IMG/VR virus record: IMGVR_UViG_3300034158_000023
Coordinates: 151,387 to 215,386 of that record
DNA: 64,000 nt
Reading direction: 5' to 3' (one strand)
The position numbers and the translations under genes were made by a program. Positions 2 through 63,013 of the stretch are shown here, piece after piece (position 1 is the stretch's first letter; every line of letters begins with the position of its first letter). The notes below the pieces were generated by a model, which did no database searches, was not told where the DNA came from, and saw only the letters and a program-made list of their open reading frames with translations.

Positions 2-1069
2 GCACCGATTGAACTTAAGAAAGGTTGGTTACCTAACGTAAACCAAGACGTTATTACTTTGGTGGGTAACGTGATAGCAAACGCTATTATGTTCATCTAT
101 CCGTTTGAACACAAGTTCCCTTTCTTACTAGGTAAGTTTAACTTAGGTAAGATTGAAAAGCAGATCATCCAAAACCTTTATGATGATGTTGGAGAAGGGG
201 AGTCAGAAGAGGCTGATAAGTTCTACGTACGTGAGCTGGTTAAGTTCATCGATGCTACAGTTTCTCTAACTGGCTTTAACGACCTGTTTGTGCCTGGTGC
301 TACCGAGTATACCTTAGGACCTGCTCCAAAGGCTCTAGCACGCATGAAGGAGCTTCTAGCGGAACATAAAGATCATCTAGACGATCCTGTTGTAATTGCC
401 GACATTCAGAAGGAGATCGAAGTTCTAGATAGAGAGTACATAGCAAGCGATCCAGATGCTGGATTCTATTTTAAAGATAAATCCTTTAAAGTAGTCCGTA
501 TGAAAATGTACTACATGTACGGTATCGAGAAGAACTTTGCTAACGATGGCACTTATACGTTTATCGAGAAGCCTCTCAACGATGGATGGGATCTATCTAA
601 ATTACCGGAGATGTCTAACACAGCACGTGATGGTTCGTTTAAGCGTGGTGCTGAAACTGCATTAGCTGGTGAGAAGGTTAAGATAGCTTTCCGTGCAATG
701 ACTGGTGTAGTTGTAAACGTTGAGGACTGTGGTAGCATGGTAGGGGAACCTATTCACATGTACTCTGACAAATACCTTAACTTTGTAGGTAGCACCTTTA
801 TCATAAACGGTAAGCTAGTGAAGGTAGATGAGTCTAACGTAGAGTCTTTCAAAGATCAAACGATGTTAGTGAGATCTCCTACTACCTGTAACGTGATCGA
901 TGGTAACCTCTGCGTTGTGTGCGTTGGTGATTTCATTAGGTCTCGTGAGAACACTCTAGGAGCTAGGGTAGCTGAGATCCCATCTACGATGATGGGACTC
1001 TCCATGGGTGCTATGCATGGTAAGGCTTTGAAGACTGTGCAGATAGATATAGCTAGAGCGTTAACATAA
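2..1069 (+). CDS. Virion RNA polymerase beta' subunit, C-terminal part (phiKZ gp80-like); 5' end lies outside the window
   Basis: Frame is open from base 2. The beta' zinc site is retained: VEDCG ... RSPTTC ... NLCVVCVG, matching DCG...RS...C...CxxC of bacterial RpoC. Position upstream of the DNA polymerase exonuclease gene matches phiKZ-like synteny. Confidence 0.85.
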   Translation, partial: APIELKKGWLPNVNQDVITLVGNVIANAIMFIYPFEHKFPFLLGKFNLGKIEKQIIQNLYDDVGEGESEEADKFYVRELVKFIDATVSLTGFNDLFVPGATEYTLGPAPKALARMKELLAEHKDHLDDPVVIADIQKEIEVLDREYIASDPDAGFYFKDKSFKVVRMKMYYMYGIEKNFANDGTYTFIEKPLNDGWDLSKLPEMSNTARDGSFKRGAETALAGEKVKIAFRAMTGVVVNVEDCGSMVGEPIHMYSDKYLNFVGSTFIINGKLVKVDESNVESFKDQTMLVRSPTTCNVIDGNLCVVCVGDFIRSRENTLGARVAEIPSTMMGLSMGAMHGKALKTVQIDIARALT

Positions 1070-1100
1070 TCAGGGGAGGGGTAAAACCCTCCCTTATGCC
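1064..1100 (+). terminator. Hairpin followed by TTATGCC, downstream of the vRNAP gene
   Basis: GGGAGGG-GTAAAA-CCCTCCC (1074-1093), then TTATGCC; upstream CATAA can pair with TTATG. Confidence 0.65.
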
Positions 1101-1110
1101 CAGTTAAATG

Positions 1111-1125
1111 GAGATATATATCATC
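1111..1125 (+). promoter_or_regulatory. Putative early (vRNAP) promoter
   Basis: GAGATA-TATATCATC matches the motif repeated at five other intergenic sites and resembles the phiKZ early consensus TATATTAC. Confidence 0.55.
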
Positions 1126-1189
1126 TATTTGTAACAAGCCGACATATAATACTTAAGACAAATCTTATTTTATTACACCTATCTTATTA

Positions 1190-1328
1190 TATGTTTAAAC
1201 GCCCTTGACGTTGCTCTGCACGCCCCTGGCGTCTATGCTGTTTATATATATAAGGAAATCTAAGAAAGTATAAGAAACACGTATAAACAGCATACACAGG
1301 AGAGGGTACAAAGCCCTCTCCGTATGCC
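1190..1328 (+). other. Structured non-coding element: inverted repeat enclosing three tandem 10-mers; candidate sRNA, leader or origin
   Basis: TATGCTGTTTATA (1234-1246) and TATAAACAGCATA (1282-1294) are a perfect 13-bp inverted repeat enclosing TAAGGAAATC/TAAGAAAGTA/TAAGAAACAC. Closed by hairpin GGAGAGGG/CCCTCTCC (1299-1321). Confidence 0.45.
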
Positions 1329-1354
1329 TATATAAAACCATAAAAGGAAAACCA

Positions 1355-1804
1355 ATGAGTAAACGTAAAGCTAAAGCTAAAAGCAAACCTGAGGTAACTG
1401 ATCACTCCAGGATCTTAGAAACTATCCTAGGAGATAAACTCCACTGGTTACACAGAGGAATGGCAAAGCAAACCTTAGAAGATGCAGCAGGAGATCCTAT
1501 CTATCGATACAGCCTATACAGAGGCAACGTAGTGATAGACTTCTACCCATCTACACCAGAAGCTATCACCTTGAGAGATACTATCCCATTCGCAGCTGAT
1601 ATGGCTATCTTACTAAAGAATCAACTTTGTATCAACACAGTTGATAACTTCCGTAATACATTGCTAGACGTATGCTTACATAAAGCTAAAAGCCGTAAGT
1701 TACACATAGAAGGTTTTGTTAAACAGGTTTATTACTCCATGCAGATAAACCCTGAGCTATTTGCAACCAACGCATTTACAACTAACACATTTGAAGGTAA
1801 GTAA
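1355..1804 (+). CDS. Hypothetical protein with basic N-terminus (149 aa)
   Basis: ORF with AAAAGGA SD; stop overlaps the next start (TAATG). Confidence 0.7.
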   Translation: MSKRKAKAKSKPEVTDHSRILETILGDKLHWLHRGMAKQTLEDAAGDPIYRYSLYRGNVVIDFYPSTPEAITLRDTIPFAADMAILLKNQLCINTVDNFRNTLLDVCLHKAKSRKLHIEGFVKQVYYSMQINPELFATNAFTTNTFEGK

Positions 1805-2151: not shown

Positions 2152-2198
2152 TTATTATGTATACTTTGACTTACCGAGTATAACGAACGGAGCAACCC

Positions 2199-3128: not shown

Positions 3129-3142
3129 TCTTATCCATATTA

Positions 3143-3170
3143 GGGAGAGCTACGGCTCTCCCGTTATGCC
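3143..3170 (+). terminator. Hairpin followed by TTATGCC
   Basis: GGGAGAGC-TACG-GCTCTCCC, then GTTATGCC. Confidence 0.7.
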
Positions 3171-3172
3171 GT

Positions 3173-3200
3173 TTCGAAAATAACCTACGGATATATCATC
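3173..3200 (+). promoter_or_regulatory. Putative early promoter
   Basis: TTCGAAAA-N11-TATATCATC. Confidence 0.6.
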
Positions 3201-3235
3201 CACGTGTATACACCTTACAATAAAAGGAAAGTTCA

Positions 3236-4027: not shown

Positions 4028-4063
4028 TATGTAGCGCTTAGCCGTTAATTATTGACGGCATAT

Positions 4064-4092
4064 GAGAGAGTGTCCCCACTCTCTCTTTTTTT
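4064..4092 (+). terminator. Intrinsic terminator
   Basis: GAGAGAGTG-TCCC-CACTCTCTC followed by a T7 run; preceded by CGGCATA. Confidence 0.8.
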
Positions 4093-4111
4093 ATTATAAA
4101 AGGATTTCCAC

Positions 4112-4783: not shown

Positions 4784-4791
4784 GCACACCT

Positions 4792-4840
4792 GGCATAAAG
4801 GGAGAGTGTAAGCTCTCCCTTATTTTTTTTTGTTTTATGC
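4792..4840. terminator. Bidirectional terminator between convergent genes; near-copy of 27086-27136
   Basis: GGCATAAAGGGAGAGT-GTAA-GCTCTCCCTTA-T-run-GTTTTATGC. Confidence 0.8.
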
Positions 4841-9430: not shown

Positions 9431-9438
9431 CATAACCT

Positions 9439-9470
9439 TGATCCATGGGTAGCGCCATGGATCATTTGCC
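9439..9470 (+). other. Perfect 10-bp intergenic hairpin
   Basis: TGATCCATGG-GTAGCG-CCATGGATCA, then TTTGCC; preceded by GCATAA. Confidence 0.6.
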
Positions 9471-9484
9471 TTAAGGAATTTATT

Positions 9485-10888
9485 ATGTTCGATTATGCTG
9501 AATACGATAAAGCGCAAAAAGCCTTAACCGTTTTACGCGATATCCAAGAGAACGTTAAAGTAAACGGTGTGTCTAGAGCCGATATCACATATGCTCTAGA
9601 AGCCGCCGAGATTTTCAAACTCCCTAATCGGTACCCAGTTAACTCATTCACTGCTGAAGCTAGTAGCACTAATTTAGACGTGGCTCTAGAAAGTCTATCT
9701 GAAGGTCAACGCCTAGGTTACTCTATTTTAACTGGTGTGATCGTAGGTCTCTTAGCTAAGATCATTTCTTATTTTTTCACTGGTGGTAGTAGCGGTGGTT
9801 CTGGTAGTTCGGCTCCGTACATTGCAAAGCAGAACCACACTCTGGAACAATTCGCAAATCTTAAAAAGATTGCTGTGTTGGAAAGAGAGAGAGCTGACGA
9901 GATAGCATCTATGGGTGTTAGACGTAAAGCTATGCGTAAAGTGCTAGGAGATGTAGAGATCTCTGAGTACATGTTGCAACATCCCTATACACGGATTGCA
10001 TTTGAAACCTTGTGTTCTCATAACGCTAAGTTTAGAAAATGTACTTCGTTTTTAGGTGAGCTCCAGAAACGTGAAAACCTTCGAAGCATTTATGTCTTCA
10101 TTATGCAAGAGCTAAATGATTCTTTGTTAGAGATGATCGAAACTGCTGATGCCATTAAAGAGTGGGTGTACGCTCGTCGTCGTGGTGGCAACAGAGAAAA
10201 AGTAATCGAGCCACGTTTGCAGATCCCTGGCCCAATGTTAGATCGCTTTATTGCACGTGGTACTAAATCAGTCCATGGCTGGTTAGCAGCTAACAATATC
10301 GTTGGCCCTGGCATGATGATTGATGTTACGCCACCAGATGAGTACAAAGGGGTACCTATCCCAACGGAAGATATCCCGTTGTTCTTACTGATCGAAACAT
10401 TTAAGTTTATGAATCAGATGAGCAGTGATCCTACAGGCATCAAGTTTGCGGAACCTACTGACTATCTAGATCGTTTAATCACAGCAAAAGAAAAACTGTT
10501 GCTGCGGGTTACTAGTTCTACGGTGTTAGAAGAATGGGAACCTTTACCTAATGCTACGCCTAAAGACTACGATCCAATGGACAGAGCTACTTTACTTAAC
10601 AAACGTGTAAGTAAAGCGTACGATAAGACTGAGTGGAATACTCTTTTCTCTAAGCCTAAACCTGATGGTAAGGATGGCGATGAAGAGAGCGATTGGTTTG
10701 TAGGGGAAAGTTGGAAGTTAGTGGATATCTATTTTGACGGAGTACAGAGTCTCTATAAAGAATCTGCAATTCTGTTGAAGATGGCTAACGATATTATTTC
10801 TGGTATGCATGACGCTTTGCGCATCGTGGACAAGTATCAGAAAGAACTCAAAACTGAAACTAAAGAAACTGAACCTGCTGCTGAGTAG
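9485..10888 (+). CDS. Virion head/ejection protein with cleaved propeptide
   Basis: YPVNSFT...NLDVALE|SL propeptide signature typical of phiKZ-like head proteins, followed by hydrophobic helix GYSILTGVIVGLLAKIISYFF and a GS linker. Confidence 0.7.
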   Translation: MFDYAEYDKAQKALTVLRDIQENVKVNGVSRADITYALEAAEIFKLPNRYPVNSFTAEASSTNLDVALESLSEGQRLGYSILTGVIVGLLAKIISYFFTGGSSGGSGSSAPYIAKQNHTLEQFANLKKIAVLERERADEIASMGVRRKAMRKVLGDVEISEYMLQHPYTRIAFETLCSHNAKFRKCTSFLGELQKRENLRSIYVFIMQELNDSLLEMIETADAIKEWVYARRRGGNREKVIEPRLQIPGPMLDRFIARGTKSVHGWLAANNIVGPGMMIDVTPPDEYKGVPIPTEDIPLFLLIETFKFMNQMSSDPTGIKFAEPTDYLDRLITAKEKLLLRVTSSTVLEEWEPLPNATPKDYDPMDRATLLNKRVSKAYDKTEWNTLFSKPKPDGKDGDEESDWFVGESWKLVDIYFDGVQSLYKESAILLKMANDIISGMHDALRIVDKYQKELKTETKETEPAAE

Positions 10889-10892
10889 ACAA

Positions 10893-10927
10893 CATAGAAG
10901 AGGAGCTCCTAGGAGCTCCTCTATGCC
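10893..10927. terminator. Palindromic hairpin between convergent genes
   Basis: Perfect 24-bp palindrome AGAGGAGCTCCTAGGAGCTCCTCT (10899-10922) flanked by CATAG/CTATGCC. Confidence 0.7.
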
Positions 10928-10929
10928 GT

Positions 10930-13827
10930 TTATTCCTTGTGGGCTATGAAGTCTACCAAGATAGCTTCTTCTATGCCTAGGGATGCGTTTGACAGCACCT
11001 TAAGGTTACGTCTAACACTACAGCGAGTAGCTTCATCCACAGCAGTGAATGTAGAGATATCTCTATCTGGGCCCATAGGATCCATTTCAATACTCAACAC
11101 GTCACCCTTGATAGCCACTTTAAGCATATCTGTAATACCAGCAATACTTACCGTAGCTTCTTTCAAAGCTTCGTTAATAACTCGCTTAGTAGTTTTAGTT
11201 ATGCTTTCACGCAATAGTAGATTACCGTAGTTAAGTCTAGTCATGTAGTAAGTAACCACAAAACTTAATCTAGCAGGAATCTCCACAACCACGTTACTAC
11301 CTACAATTACTTTGTTCTGTCCTAAAGACTTCTTAGGATAGTAGTAAAGTTCAGTCTTAGCATGGAGTTGTGGTTTAATCGAGTTTAACTTACCAGATAA
11401 GAACTCTAATACAGTATCAGCAATAGTGTTTCTGTAAGCCACATCAGTTACACTGTTACTAAAGTAATAAGCTCCATCTACTAAAAACAAATCTATTTGA
11501 CGATCTGTTTTCCTAGGTTTAACTACGATAGGTAAACCACTTTCATCATAAACCACGTCAGAGGCTTTAGCTTTGTAAACTACCTGCCCGTCGTCGTCTA
11601 ATAAAGGATCACCCTTATGGATTAGCACGTTGTACTTAGCTTCTCCGTTCTCTATCCAGATTTTAGGTAACCCAGTTATTGGATCAGTTTCTAAAATGGT
11701 GTCTGGGTAAGTGTAAGGTACATCCACCCCGTATGTGGCATACTGCACGCTACTATCAACGGTTCTGCCATTACTCCACAAGTTAGTAAGAGCCTCACCA
11801 AACTTCAGCTCCACAGACTCCTGTACAATCCCCACAACTTCATCAGGCAACAAGTGTCTACCTAATCGTAAGTCGATGTCACTCTTACTTAAGCCGTAGA
11901 TAGAGTAATCAGAAACCCCATAGATCAAACTGAACTTCTCAGTTAACCCACAACCGAAGTTACGTACTTGGTCAGAGAACATACTGAAGTTATTCAACAT
12001 TATTAAATCTCTACTATCGATATCTAAAGTAGTTTTAATAGTGAATTCCCAAATAGCGTTACCTTCCTCAGTAACTGCTTTAAGTACCCCATTTAAAAAC
12101 GCTGGGTTGTTTTCTTTATCTGGAATGAAACTTAATTGACAGAACAGTTTCTCCATAGGCAAGTCTTGGTAGTTATCACCAGACAGAACCTCGATCGTCA
12201 ATACCCAGTTGTCGCCTTTTCTAACAAACGAAAGTTTATTAGTGGCTACGTTAAGTTGAGTAGTGTCGTTCTCTAAGATAAACTGTCTGCTAGTTACGTT
12301 AGCATTACCTAAGTAATAAGCACGGCAATCGAAAGAGTTACCAGTTGCATCCAGTACATAGTGGAATGGCGAATACATAAACTCAGTAGAGTTCACAGCA
12401 GTAGCCAAAGCATCATTAGACAACCCTAGATAGAAAGGGTGTTCCAAGTTTGACACCACAGTTACAATACCGTTCTCACTTTTATAGAGAGTATCGGGAG
12501 TTACAGTTAAACGTAATCCGTTGTCTCTAGTGTTAGATGAGGTAGCCAGATCATCCATGTTGGTTTGTAACGTACCAATCATACAAGCTGCCCCTGAAGT
12601 AAACTCAGAGTTAGCAACCGCAGGTAGATGTCGAGTAGCTTGATAAACACGACGCATCAAGTTGTCGATACTAAGAATGATAGTAAACCCATCAATTTCA
12701 AAGTTAGTACGTAGCTGCGCTTCAGTGATTGGGTTAGTAGTGCGGTTAGCATTCTCAATAGAACGTTTACGCGCTTCCTCAAAGGTTAGTCCACTACGAC
12801 CACCGTTAACCTTACCGTCACCAGCAATACCCATCACACTCCAAGATTCCAAAGGAGTATAATAAATAGAATCAGTGATGTCAGTAAACCCTTTACCATA
12901 CTCTAGCGAGAACGCATTAGATACGTACTCACCCATATCTAAATTAACTGGGCCTTTAGAGGTGTAGATAATGATCTTAATCTGAGGAGGCAACTTACCT
13001 TCACTGAAATAGATTCTAGGGATAGTTACCCGTAAAGAATTACCAGAGTAACGTAATAAAGCAGTATTGACCCGCTTGTCGTAAATTAACTCACTGTGAG
13101 TAGTTACGAACGGTGTCTCTACTCCAGATGCACTAATACCAATCACTTCACAGTGGTAGAAGTTATCAGAAAGAGCATACGCTTTATTAAAACCTACAGA
13201 TGGGTTTAGAGTATCGAAAAACTCTTTTCTATCTAACTGCACTAGCTGGATTGGTAAGTTGATCATCTCAACTTCACTTAACACACCTTGTTTCCATTCC
13301 ACGATGTTTGTTTCTAGTGGACGGATTACGCTTTGTACAGTACTGTCGTAAACTACTTGAATGCCACCGTGAGACATTACCCGGATCTCAATTGGGTAGA
13401 GAGTCATAAACGGGATACCAGTTACGGTAATTTTAGTGTACTTAGGAATAATTAATTTACGTACTCCAGTATCACCTACCTTAACTGCTTTAGCGTAGAT
13501 CTCATCCTTACTAAAGTAAACGTTAAAGTTACCGACAGCATAAGTGCAGAACAGGTTAAGGTAATCCACATCAGCCATATGGCGATACAGATCTTCCCAT
13601 GACTCTACAGTAGACTTCTCTACCTTAGTCAATGCAGTCTCCATGCGAATCAAAGCAGCAGCCGCTAATTCACTACCCATCTCTAACGTAAACACAAATG
13701 GGTTAGTAGCATCAACTAAGTCAGTAGCTCCTGCCATAATGGATTCTAAACGCTCAAACTGGTAACGCTGAAATGTTGCTGGGGAATAACCAGTCTTTAG
13801 TAGCGTATCAATAATTCCAGTCATCAT
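10930..13827 (-). CDS. Large virion structural protein, probably baseplate (phiKZ gp87-like)
   Basis: 965 aa, beta-rich; NPFVFTLE, YSPFHYVLD and C-terminal pattern resemble this conserved phiKZ-like family; GGAGG SD; synteny. Confidence 0.65.
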   Translation of the reverse strand: MMTGIIDTLLKTGYSPATFQRYQFERLESIMAGATDLVDATNPFVFTLEMGSELAAAALIRMETALTKVEKSTVESWEDLYRHMADVDYLNLFCTYAVGNFNVYFSKDEIYAKAVKVGDTGVRKLIIPKYTKITVTGIPFMTLYPIEIRVMSHGGIQVVYDSTVQSVIRPLETNIVEWKQGVLSEVEMINLPIQLVQLDRKEFFDTLNPSVGFNKAYALSDNFYHCEVIGISASGVETPFVTTHSELIYDKRVNTALLRYSGNSLRVTIPRIYFSEGKLPPQIKIIIYTSKGPVNLDMGEYVSNAFSLEYGKGFTDITDSIYYTPLESWSVMGIAGDGKVNGGRSGLTFEEARKRSIENANRTTNPITEAQLRTNFEIDGFTIILSIDNLMRRVYQATRHLPAVANSEFTSGAACMIGTLQTNMDDLATSSNTRDNGLRLTVTPDTLYKSENGIVTVVSNLEHPFYLGLSNDALATAVNSTEFMYSPFHYVLDATGNSFDCRAYYLGNANVTSRQFILENDTTQLNVATNKLSFVRKGDNWVLTIEVLSGDNYQDLPMEKLFCQLSFIPDKENNPAFLNGVLKAVTEEGNAIWEFTIKTTLDIDSRDLIMLNNFSMFSDQVRNFGCGLTEKFSLIYGVSDYSIYGLSKSDIDLRLGRHLLPDEVVGIVQESVELKFGEALTNLWSNGRTVDSSVQYATYGVDVPYTYPDTILETDPITGLPKIWIENGEAKYNVLIHKGDPLLDDDGQVVYKAKASDVVYDESGLPIVVKPRKTDRQIDLFLVDGAYYFSNSVTDVAYRNTIADTVLEFLSGKLNSIKPQLHAKTELYYYPKKSLGQNKVIVGSNVVVEIPARLSFVVTYYMTRLNYGNLLLRESITKTTKRVINEALKEATVSIAGITDMLKVAIKGDVLSIEMDPMGPDRDISTFTAVDEATRCSVRRNLKVLSNASLGIEEAILVDFIAHKE

Positions 13828-20337: not shown

Positions 20338-20360
20338 TCGCACTCGGGTATTGAAATGAG

Positions 20361-20390
20361 GAAGGGGGCTTCGGCTCCCTTCTTTTGCCG
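20361..20390 (+). terminator. Intrinsic terminator
   Basis: GAAGGGGGC-TTCG-GCTCCCTTC, then TTTTGCC. Confidence 0.75.
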
Positions 20391-20442
20391 TCAGTTATAA
20401 ATTACCACAGAGCCTAATGGTGTAGGCAACTGAGGAGGCACT

Positions 20443-24703: not shown

Positions 24704-26016
24704 TAAAAAGCCTCACAACGCATGCTGAGGTAGTTAAATCTATCCAGGCCGATACCTACCCAACTTACTTTGAATACAAGTGTCAGTTCACAGTCAATGG
24801 TTTAGTGATCGACACTTTAAAAACTGTGGAGATAGATATAGCCGAAGACTATGCGAATGGTTATGGGGCTGCTATCATAATCTCTGTGGCCATGATTTTA
24901 GATGACTACATGCAGAAGGTTTATCCTAATCGGAATGCGTTAACCTGTACTCTGGTTAAAAAGGCGGTTACAACTGGAGTTACAGCTGTAACTCCTTTGA
25001 TGTCTACTACGGTAGAGTATTCCGTGGTGCCATTAGACAACGTTGACATGGCTGCATCTGCTAAAGTTAACTTTGATGGTAAGTTAGGGATAGGAACATT
25101 TAAGTTCCAGTTGATCCCATTACCTTTAGAGAAACTTAGACTAGAAACTGTCAGTGGGGTATATCCGGAAGCCGCAGCGATTGATGTACTTAAAGTGTTA
25201 CTAGGTAATGCTACCCGTAAACGAGCTACAAACAGTTCTAACGCGTTTACTGGGTTTGCCGCTACCGAGCCACCTAAAGAGATCAAAGTAAAGCCACAGC
25301 TGATAATTAAGCCCACTAACGTGCTTGATCTACCTACGTACTTACAGAAACATTGTGGTGGTATCTACAACCATGGTATTGGTTGTTATTTCTACAATAC
25401 TTTCTGGTATATATACCCACTGTACGATTGCACTAGATACGATAGAGCAAAACGCACTTTGGATATTGCAGTACTGCCCCAACAACAAACTATCGGCATA
25501 GATAAAACTTATGCTTACGTTAACAACCGAGCATTTATTTTAATCACTGCTGAGTTCCAAGAAACAGATAACCGAGATGTAAAAATGTTAAACAAGGGTA
25601 ATGGCGTTAGGTTCTCTAATGCTACTATCATGTTTGATGAGTTTACTACTCGTGGTGGAAACAAAGCTACTACTGATATCACTAAGAACGTTTCACAGTT
25701 TGTTTTAAGTGAACGTGAAACAGGTGACCAGTATGCTCCATTCAGTGATAATGAGATTACTGATAACGTAGCGCAGGAACTGTCTAAGCTAAGTGCTAGA
25801 ATGGGGACGGAAGTAACTATGCGATGGAAGTATGCTAACCCTGATATCCTATATCCTGGGATGCCAGTCAAAGTACACTTCCCCGTAGAAGGTGGGGTTA
25901 AAGAAAGGTTAGGGGTATTGTTAGCTATACAAACATATGGCCGTACTTTACAACCAGAAATGACTGCAATGAAAGTAGGTATGGAAGTTGCATTAAAGTT
26001 ATTCTTAGCTGACTAA
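24697..26016 (+). CDS. Conserved phiKZ-like protein (gp104-like position)
   Basis: 439 aa; YLQKHCGGIYNHGIGCY motif; terminator downstream. Confidence 0.6.
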   Translation: MVVKSLTTHAEVVKSIQADTYPTYFEYKCQFTVNGLVIDTLKTVEIDIAEDYANGYGAAIIISVAMILDDYMQKVYPNRNALTCTLVKKAVTTGVTAVTPLMSTTVEYSVVPLDNVDMAASAKVNFDGKLGIGTFKFQLIPLPLEKLRLETVSGVYPEAAAIDVLKVLLGNATRKRATNSSNAFTGFAATEPPKEIKVKPQLIIKPTNVLDLPTYLQKHCGGIYNHGIGCYFYNTFWYIYPLYDCTRYDRAKRTLDIAVLPQQQTIGIDKTYAYVNNRAFILITAEFQETDNRDVKMLNKGNGVRFSNATIMFDEFTTRGGNKATTDITKNVSQFVLSERETGDQYAPFSDNEITDNVAQELSKLSARMGTEVTMRWKYANPDILYPGMPVKVHFPVEGGVKERLGVLLAIQTYGRTLQPEMTAMKVGMEVALKLFLAD

Positions 26017-26053
26017 CATAAACTGGGAGGACTGCTAGTCCTCCCATTATGCC
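26017..26053 (+). terminator. Hairpin followed by TTATGCC
   Basis: CATAA-ACTGGGAGG-ACTGCTAGT-CCTCCCA-TTATGCC. Confidence 0.65.
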
Positions 26054-26057
26054 GTGA

Positions 26058-26085
26058 CTGGAAAACTTTCTAAATATATATTGTT
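26058..26085 (+). promoter_or_regulatory. Putative early promoter
   Basis: CTGGAAAA-N11-TATATTG. Confidence 0.55.
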
Positions 26086-26087
26086 TT

Positions 26088-26124
26088 AGTAGTAAGAAAG
26101 CATAAAGCTTTCTATTCATAAAAC
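26088..26124 (+). repeat. 37-nt leader repeat with hairpin, copy 1
   Basis: AGTAGTAAGAAAGCATAAAGCTTTCTATTCATAAAAC, identical to 63062-63098; contains hairpin AGAAAGC-ATAAA-GCTTTCT. Confidence 0.9.
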
Positions 26125-26140
26125 AATAAAGGGTATTACC

Positions 26141-26780: not shown

Positions 26781-27084
26781 GTTGCCACCACTCCCTAAGC
26801 AGATCTATGATCGATCTACAAAGATGTGTATGGTAACTGTAAACGACGTTACATTCCCTTTCTCTGTCACACTACCACTAGAGAAAGATTATCTAAATCC
26901 AGAACTTGAAGCAATGCCTAAAGTTGATCTGTGGAACTTCCAATCTAAACTTAGAGAACTCAAAATACTTGCTGATGATGAATTTCTCTGCACCGTGCAA
27001 ACTGGCCTTAAGTTTAAGGAAAGGCACAAGGGTGCTAACGTTAGACCGGATGAAGCAGCTGCCATTAAATACGAATGGAACTAA
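26770..27084 (+). CDS. Hypothetical protein; track start 26680, likely start MYIELPP at 26770
   Basis: Open frame ending just before the bidirectional terminator; start uncertain. Confidence 0.5.
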   Translation: MYIELPPLPKQIYDRSTKMCMVTVNDVTFPFSVTLPLEKDYLNPELEAMPKVDLWNFQSKLRELKILADDEFLCTVQTGLKFKERHKGANVRPDEAAAIKYEWN

Positions 27085-27085
27085 A

Positions 27086-27136
27086 CGGCATAAAGAGAGA
27101 GCTTAGTGCTCTCTCTTATTTTTTTGTTTTATGCCG
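27086..27136. terminator. Bidirectional terminator; near-copy of 4792-4840
   Basis: CGGCATAAAGAGAGAGC-TTAGT-GCTCTCTCTTA-T-run-GTTTTATGCCG. Confidence 0.8.
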
Positions 27137-29230: not shown

Positions 29231-29274
29231 TAATAGTGTGTAATTTAATTCTGACGACTCCATCGGTCGTATAG

Positions 29275-31501: not shown

Positions 31502-31520
31502 CGATTACTTAGTATGACTT

Positions 31521-31550
31521 AAAAGAGAGGGGCTTCGGCTCCTCTCTTTT
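31521..31550 (+). terminator. Intrinsic terminator
   Basis: AAAAGAGAGGGGC-TTCG-GCTCCTCTCTTTT. Confidence 0.8.
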
Positions 31551-31552
31551 GT

Positions 31553-31580
31553 CCCGAACTTATCGTAGACATATATTATC
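31553..31580 (+). promoter_or_regulatory. Putative early promoter for the nvRNAP-containing operon
   Basis: CCCGAACT-N11-TATATTATC. Confidence 0.55.
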
Positions 31581-36060: not shown

Positions 36061-36074
36061 GGTAGTTAGGAATT

Positions 36075-36098
36075 AGAGGGCTTCGGCCCTCTTTTTTT
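36075..36098 (+). terminator. Intrinsic terminator
   Basis: AGAGGGC-TTCG-GCCCTCT followed by a T run. Confidence 0.85.
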
Positions 36099-36134
36099 GC
36101 TGTATCGTATGGTGCAATTTAAGCAGGATGAGAT

Positions 36135-36710
36135 ATGGCTAAGTTAATACGCAGAACTGTTAGCGTAGAAGCAGAAGATGTTTCTGGAGCAACAGTAAAA
36201 GAAAAAGAACACGTATGGTTATTACGTGGGGTAGACATAGAACAAATTAAAAAGTTAGCCACATCTAGTGAACTTCAAGAACAGTGGAGTTTCATGGGAC
36301 CTAATGCTAACCTACGAGTACGAGCGATAGATAACACTACGTTTATACAAACAGGTAAGTCTTGGGTAGATGGAGTAGACGGCAAAGATGAAACACAGCT
36401 AGAAACTAATCTAGCCATGTTTAAAGTCTTTAAGTCGTTAGCTACGTCAGGTATGGTTAAACGTCGTTACATAGTGCCGTATCGTGGACATACCTTAGAA
36501 GTGGATATCTTCTTTGAAGGTCATGTACCTGATGGTAGACCAGCTGAGTGGTGCAAGGTGGATCTAGAAGTTAAAGATCTTTCTTTACCTGTACCTGATT
36601 TGCCATTTACTGCTGAGGAGATTATCAAGGATATCCCTCACAACCGTCCAGCAGAGTTACAGCAGATAGTTCCGCAGATCTATAGTACTTACTTCAGCGT
36701 TAAGAAATAA
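36135..36710 (+). CDS. CYTH-domain (triphosphate tunnel metalloenzyme) protein
   Basis: EKEHVW (ExExK-like), LRVR, KRRY, LEVDIF and VDLEV motifs in CYTH order. Confidence 0.65.
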   Translation: MAKLIRRTVSVEAEDVSGATVKEKEHVWLLRGVDIEQIKKLATSSELQEQWSFMGPNANLRVRAIDNTTFIQTGKSWVDGVDGKDETQLETNLAMFKVFKSLATSGMVKRRYIVPYRGHTLEVDIFFEGHVPDGRPAEWCKVDLEVKDLSLPVPDLPFTAEEIIKDIPHNRPAELQQIVPQIYSTYFSVKK

Positions 36711-36746
36711 ATGCGTAGGAAGCTCCTAGGAGCTTCCTGTATGCCG
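36711..36746 (+). terminator. Hairpin followed by TATGCC
   Basis: AGGAAGCTC-CTAG-GAGCTTCCT, then GTATGCC; same AGCTCCTAGGAGCT core as 10904-10917. Confidence 0.65.
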
Positions 36747-36747
36747 T

Positions 36748-36775
36748 CTTGAAACAAGACTAGATATATATTACC
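36748..36775 (+). promoter_or_regulatory. Putative early promoter
   Basis: CTTGAAAC-N11-TATATTACC, containing the phiKZ early consensus TATATTAC. Confidence 0.65.
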
Positions 36776-36811
36776 TTTGGGTACACACCTAATTATAAAA
36801 GGATTACTGAA

Positions 36812-38515: not shown

Positions 38516-38525
38516 TTAGTAAGAC

Positions 38526-38561
38526 AGCAAAAATAGGAGCTTTCGCTCCTATTTTTTTTGC
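38526..38561. terminator. Bidirectional terminator
   Basis: AGCAAAAATAGGAGC-TTTC-GCTCCTATTTTTTTTGCT between convergent genes. Confidence 0.85.
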
Positions 38562-38565
38562 TTAG

Positions 38566-43705: not shown

Positions 43706-44490
43706 TGATGTACAAATATAACCTACCTTCTAAAACTATCATCTACCAACACATCTCTGCTAGTATGAAGAGACCTGTGACTGCTGATGATATTACGATT
43801 GTGTCTGTCTCTCCGTCTACAAACCCTAAAGGTAATACAGAGATTAGACTTAAAGCAGTAGAAGGCGGCATCTTCAGTGGTGACCGTTTATACTACTACA
43901 CCCGTGTAGATATCAATCAGATTGTTAACGCGTTATCGTTGTCTGTGCCTTACGATGAATACGTGAACAGTTATGAGGTCTTATCAGCGCTGAATGCCAA
44001 GTATGGGTTTGCTTTAGTATTCAATGAGATTGTAAAGGAAGATTACGACAACCGTAAGCGTACCTATTACGAACTTACTTTAGATCCTTCTAGCTATGTA
44101 TGGACAGGTGTATTAAAGGTATTTAAAGATCCTGCTCCTAACTCACTGGAAAGGTTGCTAGTGCAGGATAGCGTAACTGCACCTTTGGTAACTGGTTATC
44201 GAAGAGGGAAACTAACAGGAGAATTACTGTATAAACCTTATGAGTTTAACGGTATTCGAGATAGATTAGAAAAGCTAGTTCCAGGTGGTGCACAGGAACA
44301 CGTCATTCTAGATATTTTGAAAACTGTGATAGCTGACCCATGGGAGTTTAAACCAGGGGTGCCTAGTGAGTGGAACATTGCAGGATGTACTGTGGAACAT
44401 ATCAGACAAGGTGTGTATCGCATAGTGCGAATCCATTTAACTAGCTCTTGTCTATTTATAGACGGGTTTATAGAACTGAAATACGTATAA
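43705..44490 (+). CDS. Tail/baseplate-associated structural protein
   Basis: N-terminal Ig-like unit (NTEIRL.A...F.G....YY.RVDI) also seen in 61007-61510. Confidence 0.55.
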   Translation: MMYKYNLPSKTIIYQHISASMKRPVTADDITIVSVSPSTNPKGNTEIRLKAVEGGIFSGDRLYYYTRVDINQIVNALSLSVPYDEYVNSYEVLSALNAKYGFALVFNEIVKEDYDNRKRTYYELTLDPSSYVWTGVLKVFKDPAPNSLERLLVQDSVTAPLVTGYRRGKLTGELLYKPYEFNGIRDRLEKLVPGGAQEHVILDILKTVIADPWEFKPGVPSEWNIAGCTVEHIRQGVYRIVRIHLTSSCLFIDGFIELKYV

Positions 44491-44491
44491 C

Positions 44492-44520
44492 TAAGGTAGG
44501 GGTTCGCCCCTACCTTATGC
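44492..44520. terminator. Hairpin between convergent genes
   Basis: TAAGGTAGGGG-TTCG-CCCCTACCTTA, then TGC. Confidence 0.75.
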
Positions 44521-44549
44521 TGGCATTGTATGAGTTTTTAGGGACTAGG

Positions 44550-52418: not shown

Positions 52419-52474
52419 CATTGTAAGATGGTCTCGGCCATCTTATGATTAGACTATTAGTCTTACTTACAATG
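52419..52474 (+). other. Multi-hairpin intergenic leader before the long tail fibre gene
   Basis: Outer inverted repeat CATTGTAAG/CTTACAATG; inner hairpins TAAGATGGT-CTCG-GCCATCTTA and AGACT-ATT-AGTCT. Confidence 0.55.
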
Positions 52475-60967: not shown

Positions 60968-61006
60968 ATGACCTAGGGGGTTAGACACCCCCTTTAGGAA
61001 TTCCCT

Positions 61007-61510
61007 ATGAGTACACGGATAGATCTTAATAAACCTTCCTCAGAGATAGCTTTGTTGTTGGTAAATAAAAACAATGGAACTGATCTTACGTACACAGTTG
61101 TGGGTATAACTGGTGCGATAGCAATCGACACATCTACTACTGGGAAGAACACCGCTGCAACAGTTCATGCTTTACCTGACCAAGCTTACTACGGTAACGT
61201 ACCCTTAGAGTACGATCGTTTAGACATAACTGAGATCATCGGAAATGAAATCAATTATGTTAATGGTCCCGTATTTACAATAGATGAAGTCATTGCTGCT
61301 ATCAATATTACTTATGGCTTAGGCTTAGTATCTTCAGAGATAGAGCAAATAGATTTCAGCGCTAATGGCACAGCTATTATTAAAATAGCCGATAGCCTAG
61401 TCTACATAGACAACAAACAATTTACTATACGTGATGAGTTCGACCACTCAGTTGAACAATTCTGGCATTTAACTAACGTAGTACTACCGCCCATTATGTC
61501 TTTTAACTAA
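61007..61510 (+). CDS. Tail/baseplate-associated small protein
   Basis: NTAATV.A......YG...L.Y.RLDI unit shared with 43705-44490. Confidence 0.55.
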   Translation: MSTRIDLNKPSSEIALLLVNKNNGTDLTYTVVGITGAIAIDTSTTGKNTAATVHALPDQAYYGNVPLEYDRLDITEIIGNEINYVNGPVFTIDEVIAAINITYGLGLVSSEIEQIDFSANGTAIIKIADSLVYIDNKQFTIRDEFDHSVEQFWHLTNVVLPPIMSFN

Positions 61511-61551
61511 TCATATGGACTTAGTACAGTTAAAACTTTTTAGGGGCTATT

Positions 61552-62403
61552 ATGCTTTCGATTACTCGCACGTGTTATGGTGGCGAACTACAGACTGCGA
61601 TGCTTCAGGGCATCCCGTACTTGTACGAAACCAACAGTACCATCAATGAAGCGTTAAACATTCAGCCGGGTGTAGTACCTTCCCCTGGTGTGTATGCACA
61701 CATGAAATATTTTGTTATTGGTGTGGGTGGCCACACGCTCGGTGCATCGGCTGGCGGTAGAGCTAAAATAGTAGAAGAGGAATTCGAACCTACATCTGCC
61801 TGTTTGTATGCGATTCGCCCTTTCGTGTTGCGATTAGAATCCAATGACTTGACAGCAGAGCAACGCTTAAAGTTTGGTCTTCGCCGTAAAGAACAACATG
61901 GTGGTAAAAACTACTTTGCTTACTACGGTAAAGTTATTGACCAAGCTAATACAACAACTAAGAAAATGTTGTATAAGAAACGTAATGGCGTTGAGTCATA
62001 CATTCCGTTCTCTCCTACCAACGATAACATCAAACCTACTCCTCCTGTCATTGTGCCTAACCAGGTAGTGCCTACGTTGAGTGATGCGGATAAAATTATC
62101 GTATCTAGTTTAACTACTATTCCTTTCACGGAATGGGACGTAAATGAATACGTTAGTGCTATTCGTATTATCGATGGCGATGAAGACTTAGCGGTTATCT
62201 CTGAAGTCGGTTTAGTAGCTGCGTTCCCACGCAACATTACAGCTGAAGGTGCAGGCGGCGCTACATTCCAGTTTACTGAAATGATGGGTTCACTGCTGAT
62301 TCAGTATGTTACTTTGTTCATTGACTTCAACTCTGCAAACATGGGTACTCAGTTTAGTATCGATGCTGGTGTAGCTGAACCGTTAGTCACGAAGACTAAC
62401 TAG
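61552..62403 (+). CDS. Virion structural protein (phiKZ gp139-like)
   Basis: ITRTCYG..LQT....GIPY....NSTINE, LRKEQHGGKNYFAYYGK motifs; directly before RuvC as in phiKZ. Confidence 0.65.
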   Translation: MLSITRTCYGGELQTAMLQGIPYLYETNSTINEALNIQPGVVPSPGVYAHMKYFVIGVGGHTLGASAGGRAKIVEEEFEPTSACLYAIRPFVLRLESNDLTAEQRLKFGLRRKEQHGGKNYFAYYGKVIDQANTTTKKMLYKKRNGVESYIPFSPTNDNIKPTPPVIVPNQVVPTLSDADKIIVSSLTTIPFTEWDVNEYVSAIRIIDGDEDLAVISEVGLVAAFPRNITAEGAGGATFQFTEMMGSLLIQYVTLFIDFNSANMGTQFSIDAGVAEPLVTKTN

Positions 62404-62404
62404 T

Positions 62405-62989
62405 ATGTGGGAGCTATCTAACCCACCTATTGATATACGCGTAAGGTTACTAGCGATCGACCCAGGTTCTACTACGTTAGGGTTTGCTTTAATGTTGATA
62501 GATCCGGTGCTGAAACAAATAACTGTGGGTGATGCATTCACTCTAAACGTGGGGCGTGGAGTTAACACACACTCCTTACGATTTGAGCAGTATGGGGCTA
62601 AAGCTGAAAGGTTACATCAGATCTACATGAATATGGGTTCTGTACTGTATCAACTACAACCTCATTTGTTTATAGCAGAGTCTCCATTTGTCGGAAGATT
62701 CGCAGCAGCATTTGAAGCATTGGTGGAAGTTAGAGATGCTCTTAAAGCAGCTCTGTGGGCTCATGATCCTACTATGATCTATGAGTCTGTAGATCCACTG
62801 ACGGCAAAAAAAGCAGTTGGAGCTGCTGTCTATAAGGGTTCTAAAGAAAACGTCAGGGATAGCGTTATAGCTCTACCTGATTTAATCTGGGCACCTAACG
62901 TACTGAAGTATGAATTAGATGAGCACTCTATAGACGCGGTTGCTGTTGGTTACTGTCGAGCCATAGGTTTCTTACGTGATGGTTATTAG
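62405..62989 (+). CDS. ruvC: RuvC-like Holliday junction resolvase
   Basis: LLAIDPGSTTLG, FIAESPF, AKKAVG and HSIDAVAVG catalytic D/E/D motifs. Confidence 0.85.
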   Translation: MWELSNPPIDIRVRLLAIDPGSTTLGFALMLIDPVLKQITVGDAFTLNVGRGVNTHSLRFEQYGAKAERLHQIYMNMGSVLYQLQPHLFIAESPFVGRFAAAFEALVEVRDALKAALWAHDPTMIYESVDPLTAKKAVGAAVYKGSKENVRDSVIALPDLIWAPNVLKYELDEHSIDAVAVGYCRAIGFLRDGY

Positions 62990-63013
62990 GAGGCTTCGGC
63001 CTCCTTTTTATGC
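62988..63013 (+). terminator. Intrinsic terminator with TATGCC tail
   Basis: AGGAGGC-TTCG-GCCTCCT, then TTTTATGCC. Confidence 0.8.

What the first reader, a model, noticed from the sequence alone, without database searches (positions are those of the whole stretch)
1064..63013. Family of intergenic hairpins followed by TATG(CC) instead of, or in addition to, a U-tract
Seen: at least nine intergenic stem-loops have TATG, usually TATGCC, within a few nt of the 3' arm (1094, 1322, 3163, 10922, 26048, 36740, 44516, 52444, 63009). Variants TTTGCC/TTTTGCC follow the stems at 9465 and 20383. Many also have (G)CATA upstream, which could form a basal stem, and several lack any U-tract, so they are poor classical intrinsic terminators. 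Established: TATG is the phiKZ late-promoter consensus, and N4 vRNAP uses hairpin promoters. Inference: these may be a phage-RNAP-specific terminator class, processing sites with an extended basal stem, or dual terminator/promoter elements.
Basis: partly seen in the sequence, partly recalled or inferred. Interest (0 to 1): 0.6.

Follow-up and report, generated by a model that had tools for sequence, protein, structure and literature searches.

The report
phiKZ-type hairpin-TATGCCGT transcription terminators
The hairpins followed by TATGCC are real and far from chance, but they are this giant phage's version of the conserved stem-loop + TTAT(G)YYGT transcription terminator already mapped by RNA 3'-end sequencing in its relatives phiKZ and 201phi2-1, not promoters.

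Summary
The window is the last 64 kb of a 215-kb uncultivated phiKZ-like jumbo phage. It shares 59 large ORFs with phiKZ, including the nvRNAP beta-like subunit.

**Observation: confirmed and extended.**
- All 11 listed hairpins fold.
- The motif is longer than reported: T(A/T)TGC(C/T)GT(C/T)T, starting 0-3 nt after a GC-rich stem.
- Across the genome, 24 of 60 intergenic hairpins carry TATGCY against about 1.6 expected. Only 1 of 48 coding-region hairpins does.

**Position points to terminators.**
- The elements lie 4-23 nt after stop codons.
- They favour the sense strand.
- They occupy both strands of convergent gene gaps and are absent from divergent gaps.

**Already published in relatives.** The same layout was reported for 61 ONT-cappable-seq-mapped phiKZ terminators (hairpin + TTATKYYGT). 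My mapping of those published 3' ends puts the commonest end right before the final GT.

**Relatives agree.** A covariance model built only from this phage finds:
- 46 copies in Xanthomonas phage Xoo-sp14 and 43 in Erwinia phage Ea35-70;
- a published phiKZ terminator;
- none in SPN3US or EL, and one marginal match in AR9.

**Promoter readings.**
- The dual terminator/late-promoter reading is not supported.
- The N4-like hairpin-promoter reading is not supported.

**Still unexplained.** Why the tail carries TATG, the 4-mer that the phiKZ nvRNAP pocket binds at late promoters.

**Verdict:** new member of a known kind.

The parts
1064..1101 (+). Terminator after ORF 2-1069. AACATAA, hairpin 1074-1093 (GGGAGGG/CCCTCCC), then TTATGCCC.
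   Evidence: -17.9 kcal/mol, basal CAUA/UAUG stem; CM E=1.5e-8.
1288..1328 (+). Hairpin 1299-1321 flanked by GCATAC and GTATGCC, with TATGCTGT on the minus strand at 1288-1295. It closes a repeated ~150-nt intergenic module rather than a protein gene.
   Evidence: (-24.1 kcal/mol, z -7.3).
3135..3172 (+). Terminator after ORF 2199-3128. CCATATTA, hairpin 3143-3162, then GTTATGCCGT. An early-like promoter follows at 3190.
   Evidence: E=1.5e-10.
4052..4097 (.). Hairpin 4064-4085. The plus strand has a plain T7 tract. The minus strand has ATATGCCGT (4055-4063).
   Evidence: minus strand E=1.5e-9.
4787..4832 (.). Bidirectional terminator in a convergent gap. Hairpin 4798-4821, ATTTTTTTTTG on plus, TATGCCAGG on minus (4789-4797).
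   Evidence: minus E=2.3e-11.
9431..9472 (+). Terminator after ORF 9065-9430. GCATAACC, hairpin 9439-9464, then TTTGCCTT (T-run variant).
10886..10932 (.). Bidirectional terminator in a convergent gap. Fully palindromic hairpin 10899-10922 (GAGGAGCTCCTAGGAGCTCCTC). TATGCCGT on plus (10922-10929), TCTATGTTGT on minus.
   Evidence: E=5.7e-12 plus, 7.2e-9 minus. The same palindrome is reused at three other convergent gaps of the genome.
20350..20394 (+). Terminator after ORF 18985-20337. Hairpin 20358-20385, then TTTTGCCGT (T-run variant).
   Evidence: not in the training set, E=1.5e-5.
26013..26058 (+). Terminator after ORF 24697-26016. AACATAAAC, hairpin 26024-26046, then TTATGCCGT. An early-like promoter follows at 26076.
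   Evidence: E=2.1e-9.
27082..27127 (.). Bidirectional terminator between ORF 26680-27084 (+) and the helicase gene 27129-28676 (-). Hairpin 27093-27117, ATTTTTTTG on plus, TATGCCGT on minus (27085-27092).
   Evidence: minus E=9.6e-14. Conserved in relatives L009 and L010.
31514..31558 (+). Major-capsid-gene terminator. Hairpin 31521-31550, then (T)TTTGTCCCG.
   Evidence: untrained, E=1e-3. The orthologous site in L011 reads hairpin + TTTTATGCCC, so the two tail types interchange.
36062..36106 (+). Terminator after ORF 34270-36060. Hairpin 36075-36092, then TTTTTTGCTGT.
   Evidence: untrained, E=1.3e-5.
36706..36750 (+). Terminator after ORF 36135-36710. Hairpin 36717-36738, then GTATGCCGTCTT. 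There is no upstream CATA partner.
   Evidence: E=6.2e-11. The L010 orthologue has a different stem but keeps TTATGCCC.
38520..38564 (.). Bidirectional T-run terminator in a convergent gap. Hairpin 38529-38556, TTTGCTTAG on plus, TTTGCTGTCT on minus.
   Evidence: minus, untrained, E=2.2e-6.
44482..44526 (+). Terminator in a convergent gap. Hairpin 44492-44517, with TATGCTGG overlapping its 3' end.
   Evidence: E=1.1e-5.
52420..52452 (+). Weaker member after ORF 49878-52418. The hairpin ends in TTATGAT and lacks the GCC tail.
   Evidence: -13.9 kcal/mol. The CM did not recover it at E<0.1.
62975..63019 (+). Terminator after ORF 62405-62989. Hairpin 62988-63005, then TTTTATGCCCC. An early-like promoter follows at 63050.
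   Evidence: E=1.4e-5.
32638..34248 (+). Context gene: homologue of phiKZ gp123, the nvRNAP beta-like subunit whose lobe pocket binds non-template TATG at late promoters.
   Evidence: tblastn, 28% identity, E=2e-62; 8 of 14 named pocket residues are identical (S144, F151, H185, K190, H331, S334, Y406, Q466). Residue list from PMC12809450.

Best explanation
These are the phage's transcription terminators, of the type conserved in phiKZ-like (Chimalliviridae) jumbo phages.

Anatomy:
- A GC-rich RNA hairpin forms 4-23 nt after the stop codon. Here its 5' arm is purine-rich.
- It is followed within 0-3 nt by U(A/U)UGC(C/U)GU instead of a long U-tract.
- An upstream (G)CAUA often mirrors the tail. 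This lengthens the stem and gives a weaker copy of the motif on the other strand.
- At convergent gene pairs, both strands carry the full motif.

Inferred working:
- By analogy with the mapped phiKZ ends, I expect the RNA to end about 6-8 nt after the stem, at ...UAUGCC, just before the conserved G.
- I infer that the short U-A-U plus a pyrimidine/G step pauses the phage multisubunit RNAP while the hairpin, and where present the basal stem, strips the transcript.
- The T-run variants (TTTTTTGCYGT) are the same device with a more classical tail.

Shown versus inferred:
- Shown here: the anatomy, the enrichment, the strand and gene-end logic, the conservation in relatives, and sequence-plus-structure identity with published phiKZ terminators.
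- Inferred: that RNA ends form here in this phage, where exactly, and by what pausing mechanism.
For: Identity of the phage:
- It shares 59 ORFs of at least 200 aa with phiKZ, in synteny (helicase, gp119, capsid, gp123).

Enrichment and motif:
- Extended consensus with G (36/57), T (35/57), Y (48/57) and T (38/57) after T[AT]TGYY.

Position and strand logic:
- Motif occupancy is 23/42 on the sense side and 11/42 on the antisense side of tandem gaps (p=0.014).
- It is 23/32 on convergent sides, against 11/42 antisense (p=1.4e-4).
- No divergent gap carries it.
- The sense 5' arm has a purine fraction of 0.80, and 37 of 42 arms exceed 0.6. This points to a strand-specific, RNA-level element.

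Relatives:
- Contigs at 88%, 62% and 37% capsid identity keep the tail while the stems change wholesale.
- The capsid-gene terminator switches between TTTTGYCCC and TTTTATGCCC.

Published data:
- phiKZ consensus BCCYCCCCHWWDGGGRRGGBYTTATKYYGT at 61 mapped terminators, with bidirectional ones at convergent genes.
- My own scan of phiKZ finds the same CATAA-hairpin-TTATGYYGT layout.
- The published 3' ends fall most often at ...TTATKYY|GT: 8 of 19, range -3 to +4.

Covariance model R1, built from 18 elements of this phage:
- It hits the relatives and phiKZ, including published terminator T046.
- It gives 46 matches in Xoo-sp14 and 43 in Ea35-70. It gives 0 in SPN3US, 0 in EL and 1 weak match in AR9.

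Unbiased 4-mer counts on hairpin flanks:
- TATG is 46 against 6.6 expected here and 87 against 11.4 in phiKZ.
- It is 14 against 0.6 in 42 kb of Xoo-sp14, a 58% GC genome.
Against: - There is no transcript data for this phage. All public runs holding it are Logan contigs, the 'RNA' ones are probably DNA, and they show no ends.
- ONT 3' ends in phiKZ cannot separate true termination from processing or exonuclease trimming back to a stable hairpin.
- A UAUGCCGU hybrid is much stronger than a U-tract, so the textbook release mechanism does not obviously apply.
- Thirteen of 42 tandem hairpins fit neither tail class under my strict rules. Some of these are artefacts of stem extension.
- My gene calls come from a greedy longest-ORF script, so the 'intergenic' labels near gene starts are approximate. 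Stop codons are exact.
Confidence: 0.8

Rival explanations
1. Dual element: the hairpin terminates the upstream transcript, and the adjacent TATG (G = +1) is a late promoter where the nvRNAP re-initiates for the next gene.
For: - TATG with G at +1 is the phiKZ late-promoter core, and it is necessary in vitro (PMC4666361).
- It is bound by the gp123 pocket (PMC12809450).
- The window encodes a gp123 homologue with 8 of 14 pocket residues identical.
- In phiKZ, late TSSs P049 and P075 lie 5-10 nt after a terminator hairpin.
Against: - The motif is as frequent on convergent sides (23/32), where no gene follows, as on tandem sense sides.
- It is absent from the 14 divergent gaps, where promoters are needed.
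- None of the 25 phiKZ late TSSs I read starts at the hairpin-adjacent TATG. P049 and P075 use a second TATG.
- p119L has no hairpin.
- Most tandem sites here are followed 18-36 nt later by a separate early-like promoter, TATATAT(T/C)A(C/T)C.
Confidence: 0.08
2. RNA processing or stability elements. An endonuclease cuts at or near UAUGCCGU, or exonucleases trim back to the hairpin. The extended stem protects the mRNA 3' end, and RNAP does not actually stop there.
For: - Seven of 9 listed sites fold with a basal CAUA/UAUG stem.
- The tail is a sequence-specific, non-U-rich motif.
- Mapped 3' ends in phiKZ cannot tell termination from trimming.
Against: - 201phi2-1 terminators of this family stopped expression of a downstream reporter in a terminator trap, and those with elongated stems were the strongest.
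- Half of the tandem sites lack the basal partner.
- T-run variants replace TATG at orthologous sites, as expected of terminator tails.
Confidence: 0.1
3. N4-like DNA hairpin promoters, or a cruciform or protein-binding palindrome acting on DNA (half-sites ACGGCATA ... TATGCCGT).
For: - The inverted repeat includes flanks that mirror each other.
- The palindromic hairpin GAGGAGCTCCTAGGAGCTCCTC is reused at four sites.
Against: - The elements sit at gene 3' ends, not 5' ends.
- The distance between the mirrored flanks varies with stem and loop length (about 20-30 bp), which does not suit a dimeric dsDNA binder.
- There is a strong purine/pyrimidine strand bias tied to gene direction.
- Stems change freely between relatives while pairing is kept.
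- The phage carries phiKZ-type multisubunit RNAP genes.
Confidence: 0.02

Closest known systems
Conserved intrinsic terminator motif of Pseudomonas phage phiKZ (Putzeys et al. 2024, microLife, PMC10914365): 5'-BCCYCCCCHWWDGGGRRGGBYTTATKYYGT-3', 61 sites mapped by ONT-cappable-seq
   Same: - GC-rich stem-loop followed directly by TTAT-K-YY-GT.
- Located at gene ends.
- A mirrored (A)CAGCATAA lies upstream.
- Bidirectional copies occur between convergent genes.
- Often followed by an early-type TATATTAC promoter, for example after the capsid gene in both phages.
   Different: - Here the sense 5' arm is purine-rich (GGGAGAG...CTCTCCC). In phiKZ it is C-rich.
- The tail here is GCCGT rather than G(T/C)(C/T)GT.
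- A larger share of sites have a plain T-run before GCYGT.
- Capsid identity to phiKZ-like phages is at most 34%.
Terminator motifs A and B of Pseudomonas phage 201phi2-1 (PMC11512511)
   Same: - Motif A resembles the phiKZ motif.
- Co-occurrence of motifs A and B lengthens the stem, as the CATA/TATG basal stem does here.
- There are 15 bidirectional terminators.
- The terminators work in vivo in a terminator trap.
   Different: I could not read the motif logos or tables (no supplement is held), so the match is by the authors' description only.
Canonical bacterial intrinsic (Rho-independent) terminator
   Same: - A stable GC-rich hairpin shortly after the stop codon.
- RNA ends expected 6-8 nt after the stem.
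- Bidirectional use at convergent genes.
- The T-run subclass is nearly canonical.
   Different: - The TATGCC subclass has no U-tract and is missed by a hairpin + T-run scan.
- A specific GC-containing tail is conserved instead.
phiKZ late promoter (TATG, G = +1), read by the gp123 beta-lobe pocket (PMC4666361, PMC12809450)
   Same: - The same four bases on the non-template strand.
- The polymerase subunit that reads them is encoded in the window (32638-34248).
   Different: - Late promoters need no hairpin (p119L).
- They show no conservation after TATG.
- The elements here have a conserved CCGT tail, sit at gene ends and occur in convergent gaps.
N4 virion RNAP hairpin promoters; T7 RNAP class II (sequence-specific) pause/termination signal. 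Both recalled from my own knowledge.
   Same: - N4: a DNA hairpin acts as a polymerase signal.
- T7 class II: a short specific sequence rather than a U-tract contributes to stopping a phage RNAP.
   Different: - N4 hairpins lie upstream of early genes and serve a single-subunit RNAP.
- T7 class II signals need no hairpin.
- Neither was tested here beyond position and gene content.

Membership tests
phiKZ-type conserved terminator (hairpin + TTATKYYGT) | Stable GC-rich stem-loop | tested here: met
   all 11 listed sites fold at -12.9 to -24.1 kcal/mol, with z-scores of -2.6 to -7.3; 60 intergenic perfect-stem hairpins genome-wide.
phiKZ-type conserved terminator (hairpin + TTATKYYGT) | TTAT-K-YY-GT directly after the 3' arm | tested here: met
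   57 flanks fit T[AT]TG[CT][CT] at -5..+6 nt from the stem end (mostly 0-3). The unforced following positions read G, T, Y, T. TATGCCGT occurs 8 times against 1.44 in shuffles.
phiKZ-type conserved terminator (hairpin + TTATKYYGT) | Lies at gene 3' ends in the direction of transcription, and is bidirectional between convergent genes | tested here: met
   4-23 nt after stops; sense 23/42 against antisense 11/42; convergent sides 23/32; none in divergent gaps.
phiKZ-type conserved terminator (hairpin + TTATKYYGT) | Host genome is a phiKZ-lineage phage with its own multisubunit RNAPs | tested here: met
   phiKZ-type capsid; 59 shared ORFs including homologues of gp123, gp80 and gp178.
phiKZ-type conserved terminator (hairpin + TTATKYYGT) | Sequence-plus-structure model cross-detects published members | tested here: met
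   model R1, built from this phage, hits phiKZ 101332-101376 (published T046, TTS 101370). It gives 46 matches in Xoo-sp14 and 43 in Ea35-70. Because phiKZ has C-rich 5' arms, only about 17 phiKZ sites score E<0.01.
phiKZ-type conserved terminator (hairpin + TTATKYYGT) | RNA 3' ends map to the element | not testable with these tools
   only assembled contigs of metagenomes are held, with no raw RNA reads.
phiKZ late promoter (TATG) | TATG on the non-template strand | tested here: met
phiKZ late promoter (TATG) | Placed upstream of a late gene, so that a gene follows in that direction | tested here: not met
   23 of 32 convergent-gap sides carry the motif pointing into the 3' end of an opposing gene. 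None of the 14 divergent gaps has it.
phiKZ late promoter (TATG) | Primary transcripts start at the G | not testable with these tools
   There is no RNA data for this phage. In phiKZ, 0 of 25 late TSSs read start at a hairpin-adjacent TATG.
Canonical intrinsic terminator | U-tract of at least 5 U in the 8 nt after the stem | tested here: not met
   the sense-strand elements at 1074, 1299, 3143 and 10899 are not called. The T-run subclass (4064, 4798, 9439) is called.
N4-type hairpin promoter | Hairpin upstream of early genes, used by a single-subunit virion RNAP | tested here: not met
   the elements follow stop codons; the RNAP genes are phiKZ-type and multisubunit. No search for an N4-like vRNAP gene was run.

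The most novel reading that the evidence does not exclude
The TATG in the terminator tail may be no accident of a weak U-tract.

Proposed mechanism:
- The elongating nvRNAP would read it on the non-template strand with the same gp123 beta-lobe pocket that recognises TATG at late promoters.
- That capture would hold the enzyme for a few nucleotides, giving ends at ...UAUGYY|G in phiKZ.
- The hairpin could then release the transcript without a U-rich hybrid.
- A promoter element would thus double as a sequence-specific pause and termination signal for a sigma-embedded viral RNAP.

What it would explain:
- TATG after hairpins survives in genomes from 37% to 58% GC.
- Lineages such as SPN3US keep only TTAT(T).
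Probability: 0.15. Interest if true: 0.7.

Novelty: new member of a known kind. Interest (0 to 1): 0.33.

Why it matters
For annotation:
- These elements mark transcript ends in an uncultivated giant phage.
- Standard hairpin + U-tract predictors miss the TATGCC subclass.
- The covariance model built here finds more than 40 copies per genome in Xanthomonas and Erwinia jumbo phages.

For mechanism:
- The published motif was described in Pseudomonas phages only.
- Here it holds in a clade with at most 34% capsid identity and in a 58% GC genome, but not in SPN3US, EL or AR9.
- That pattern argues that a phage-encoded reader, not base composition, maintains it.
- It also gives a natural comparison set for asking how these unusual RNA polymerases terminate, which has not been studied biochemically.

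Tried and rejected
- **Transcript evidence.** One search for sequencing runs and one laying of reads returned only Logan contigs. The runs labelled RNA-Seq are marked probably DNA. No ends, strand or level can be read from them. I sent window:25900-31900, which is 6,001 bases, one over the operators' 6,000 advice. The call ran.
- **Close relatives.** Neither megablast nor single-protein pattern search found any. I therefore used one costly word search with the capsid protein, which gave the contigs used.
- **Rfam.** No family matches in the window.
- **ATG of TATGCCG as a start codon of small ORFs.** Rejected. The frames run 2-41 codons, apart from one copy that lies inside a long ORF, and have no common length or sequence beyond Met-Pro/Leu.
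- **Simple AT-rich chance.** Rejected.
- **TATGCC as a 6-mer.** It is not enriched by itself. The signal lies in its placement and its longer form.
- **gp123 pocket conservation.** Only suggestive. Eight of 14 residues are identical against 28% overall identity (p=0.02). Only 4 of 14 stay invariant once Xoo-sp14 is added.
- **Papers not held.** Ceyssens et al. 2014 is not held. The PMC copies of the two ONT papers hold no supplements. I used the bioRxiv supplement and read only part of its TSS and TTS tables.

Full report
**What the window is.** The window is bases 151,387-215,386 of a 215,386-bp virus record with direct terminal repeats and 41.5% GC.
- Its 721-aa capsid protein belongs to the phiKZ capsid family. 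It is at most 34% identical to any deposited phage, with Xanthomonas phage Xoo-sp14 the closest.
- A tblastn of all phiKZ ORFs of at least 200 aa finds 59 homologues in the genome, in conserved order. These include the helicase / gp119 / capsid / gp123 block that lies in this window.
- It is therefore a distant, uncultivated member of the phiKZ-like jumbo phages, which transcribe their genes with their own two multisubunit RNA polymerases.

- All 11 sites fold into stable hairpins.
- The 6-mer TATGCC is not over-represented in the window: 32 copies against 25.8 in shuffles.
- The 8-mer TATGCCGT is over-represented: 8 against 1.44, reached by none of 100 shuffles.
- Genome-wide, 17 of 25 TATGCCGT copies are intergenic against 0.2 expected.
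- Placement is the real signal. Of 60 intergenic perfect-stem GC-rich hairpins, 24 have TATGC[CT] within 0-4 nt of the stem on at least one side, against about 1.6 expected. Only 1 of 48 hairpins inside ORFs does.
- Anchoring all flanks on the G gives the consensus T(A/T)TGC(C/T)GT(C/T)T.

**Where the elements sit.** I used a simple longest-ORF gene map, in which stops are exact and starts approximate.
- The hairpins begin 4-23 nt after stop codons.
- In head-to-tail gene pairs the motif is on the sense side of 23 of 42 hairpins and on the antisense side of 11 of 42.
- In convergent gaps it is on 23 of 32 sides. That is as frequent as the sense side and far above the antisense rate (p=1.4e-4).
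- None of the 14 divergent gaps has a GC hairpin with the motif.
- The sense-strand 5' arm is purine-rich (mean 0.80). Thirty-seven of 42 arms exceed 0.6 and none falls below 0.4. The element is therefore strand-specific and follows the direction of transcription.
- A fully palindromic hairpin, GAGGAGCTCCTAGGAGCTCCTC, is reused at four convergent gaps, including window 10899-10922. It gives the same RNA hairpin in both directions.

All of this is the behaviour of terminators, not promoters.

**Relatives.** A word search with the capsid protein found metagenomic relatives at 88%, 62% and 37% capsid identity. Their contigs are syntenic with the window.
- At orthologous gene ends the stems differ wholesale, while a hairpin and the tail are kept. 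For example, window 36717 reads AGGAAGCTC...GAGCTTCCT + GTATGCCGT, and L010 reads GGGGGAGC...GCTCCCTC + TTATGCCC.
- The capsid-gene terminator reads TTTTGTCCCG here and TTTTATGCCC in the 37% relative. The TATG tail and the T-run tail are therefore interchangeable versions of one device.

**It is a known motif.**
- The ONT-cappable-seq study of phiKZ reports that most of its predicted intrinsic terminators (61 sites) share a stem-loop followed by TTAT. The consensus is BCCYCCCCHWWDGGGRRGGBYTTATKYYGT, and bidirectional pairs occur between convergent genes (PMC10914365).
- The 201phi2-1 study finds a motif that strongly resembles it at 59 sites. A second motif co-occurs with it and elongates the stem. 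Eight terminators were validated in a reporter trap in the host, and the elongated ones were strongest (PMC11512511).
- My own scan of the phiKZ genome shows the same layout as here, for example aacagcataa-GCCCTCTCC...GGAGAGGGC-ATTATGTCGT.
- The phiKZ capsid gene ends in such a terminator followed by a TATATTAC promoter, exactly as in this window.

**Where the phiKZ 3' ends fall.** I placed the published 3'-end coordinates on the phiKZ sequence, using Table S4 of the bioRxiv supplement.
- The commonest end is two bases past the K of TTATK, that is ...UUAUGYY just before the conserved GT (8 of 19, range -3 to +4).
- This is 6-8 nt after the stem.
- By analogy, I predict ends at ...UAUGCC in this phage.

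**Breadth of the family.** I built a covariance model (R1) from 18 elements of this phage only.
- In the window it recovers 17 sites at E<1e-3, all at gene ends. Four of them are untrained T-run variants.
- It finds sites in the metagenomic relatives and in phiKZ, including published terminator T046.
- It gives 46 and 43 matches in the complete genomes of Xoo-sp14 (58% GC) and Erwinia phage Ea35-70.
- It gives none in Salmonella phage SPN3US or Pseudomonas phage EL, and one marginal match in Bacillus phage AR9.
- An unbiased count of 4-mers next to hairpins agrees. TATG is 7-fold enriched here and in phiKZ, and more than 20-fold enriched in Xoo-sp14. SPN3US shows only T-rich TTAT/TATT, and EL shows GTAT/TTAT.
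- TTAT after the hairpin is therefore general in these phages. The G and the CCGT tail are lineage-specific.

**Promoter readings.** TATG with G as +1 is indeed the phiKZ late-promoter core. A recent structure shows it bound as non-template single strand in a pocket of gp123. Several findings nevertheless argue against a promoter role here.
- The model late promoter p119L has no hairpin.
- Of the 25 phiKZ TSSs labelled late in the part of Table S3 that I read, none starts at the G of a hairpin-adjacent TTATG.
- P049 and P075 start at a second TATG 5-10 nt further on. P054 and P016 start 20-30 nt further on.
- In this genome most tandem terminators are followed 18-36 nt later (mostly 22-25) by a separate promoter-like box, (A/G)TATATAT(T/C)A(C/T)C, which resembles the phiKZ early promoter.
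- Conserved hairpin-free TATG boxes upstream of the capsid gene (29269-29283) and of ORF 36135 (36105-36114) are better late-promoter candidates.
- The ATG inside the motif does not open a conserved small ORF.

**What remains open.** The TATGCC subclass has no U-tract, and a classical scan misses it. How a hybrid containing GCCG is released is unknown.
- The window's gp123 homologue (32638-34248) keeps 8 of the 14 residues named as contacting TATG, against 28% identity overall (p=0.02). Only 4 remain invariant when Xoo-sp14 is added.
- This allows, but does not show, that the polymerase reads the terminator's TATG with its promoter pocket.
- The position of the phiKZ ends, a pyrimidine followed by G, also fits the general pause preference of multisubunit RNAPs. 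That point rests on my own knowledge and was not tested.
- No RNA data exist for this phage.

**Verdict.** They are not promoters. The element is a new member of an already described kind. The added value is its reach into a distant clade and into high-GC phages, its absence from other phiKZ-like lineages, and a searchable model.

Noticed in passing
window 1116-1125, 3190-3200, 26076-26085, 31571-31580, 36766-36775, 63050-59; about 24 intergenic copies genome-wide, all but one on the + strand: A promoter-like box, (A/G)TATATAT(T/C)A(C/T)C followed by nnnGT(A/G). It resembles the phiKZ early promoter TATATTAC. In nine or more gaps it lies 18-36 nt (mostly 22-25) downstream of the terminator's T(A/T)TG. 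The near-constant spacing is unexplained.
   Followed up: partly
window 3219-3228, 4095-4104, 26697-26706, 36794-36803, 63099-63108, and many gaps elsewhere in the genome: A strongly conserved (A/T)ATAAAAGGA sits 7-10 nt before start codons. It could be an extended ribosome-binding site. In several gaps TTTACC precedes it, which recalls the phiKZ middle-promoter motif AAanTTACc.
   Followed up: no
window 1154-1354; genome 17440-17640, 83880-84080, 125960-126140: A four-copy intergenic module of about 150 nt. It contains TTTACACAGAGTATCTAT, then TATGCTGTTTATATATAAAGAGAGAT, and in three of the four copies (not 125960-126140) ends in a hairpin with a GTTAT or GTATGC tail (full TATGC in two). It may be a small transcription unit or a non-coding RNA.
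   Followed up: partly
window 26057-26130 and 63030-63105; genome 112620-112700: A three-copy module of about 75 nt holding a promoter and 5' leader (CTGGAAAAnnTTnTAnATATATAT...TAGTAGTAAGAAAGCATAAAGCTTTCTA), with its own small hairpin. A wastewater contig matches only this stretch of the region laid (record 26).
   Followed up: no
window 31984-32015, inside ORF 31632-32630: An intragenic hairpin, GTGTGGAGcgtaCTCCACAC, followed by CCGTTATGCTGT. It is the only coding-region candidate of the family in the window (CM E=0.01). It may be an internal attenuator or chance.
   Followed up: no
window 29269-29283 and 36105-36114: Hairpin-free TATG boxes (GTATAGTATGCAGTA upstream of the capsid gene, TCGTATGGTG upstream of ORF 36135). 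They are conserved in the 88% and 62% relatives, and the capsid-gene box is also partly conserved in the 37% relative. These are candidate late promoters of the phiKZ TATG type.
   Followed up: partly
window 10900-10921; genome 30145, 111319 and 124820; variant at window 36717: One perfectly palindromic hairpin, GAGGAGCTCCTAGGAGCTCCTC (loop CTAG included), is reused at four convergent gene gaps.
   Followed up: yes
whole record: Near-identical DNA turns up in metagenomes of peat, biofilm, animal gut, food, wastewater, freshwater and groundwater, from 14 studies. It also appears in one run labelled with a single organism (coded 'organism A'), which might point to the host.
   Followed up: no
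phiKZ, SPN3US and EL genomes (loci L014-L027, L034-L056): The hairpin arms are C-rich on the 5' side in phiKZ but purine-rich here, in Xoo-sp14 and in Ea35-70. SPN3US and EL keep TTAT after hairpins but not TATG or CCGT.
   Followed up: partly
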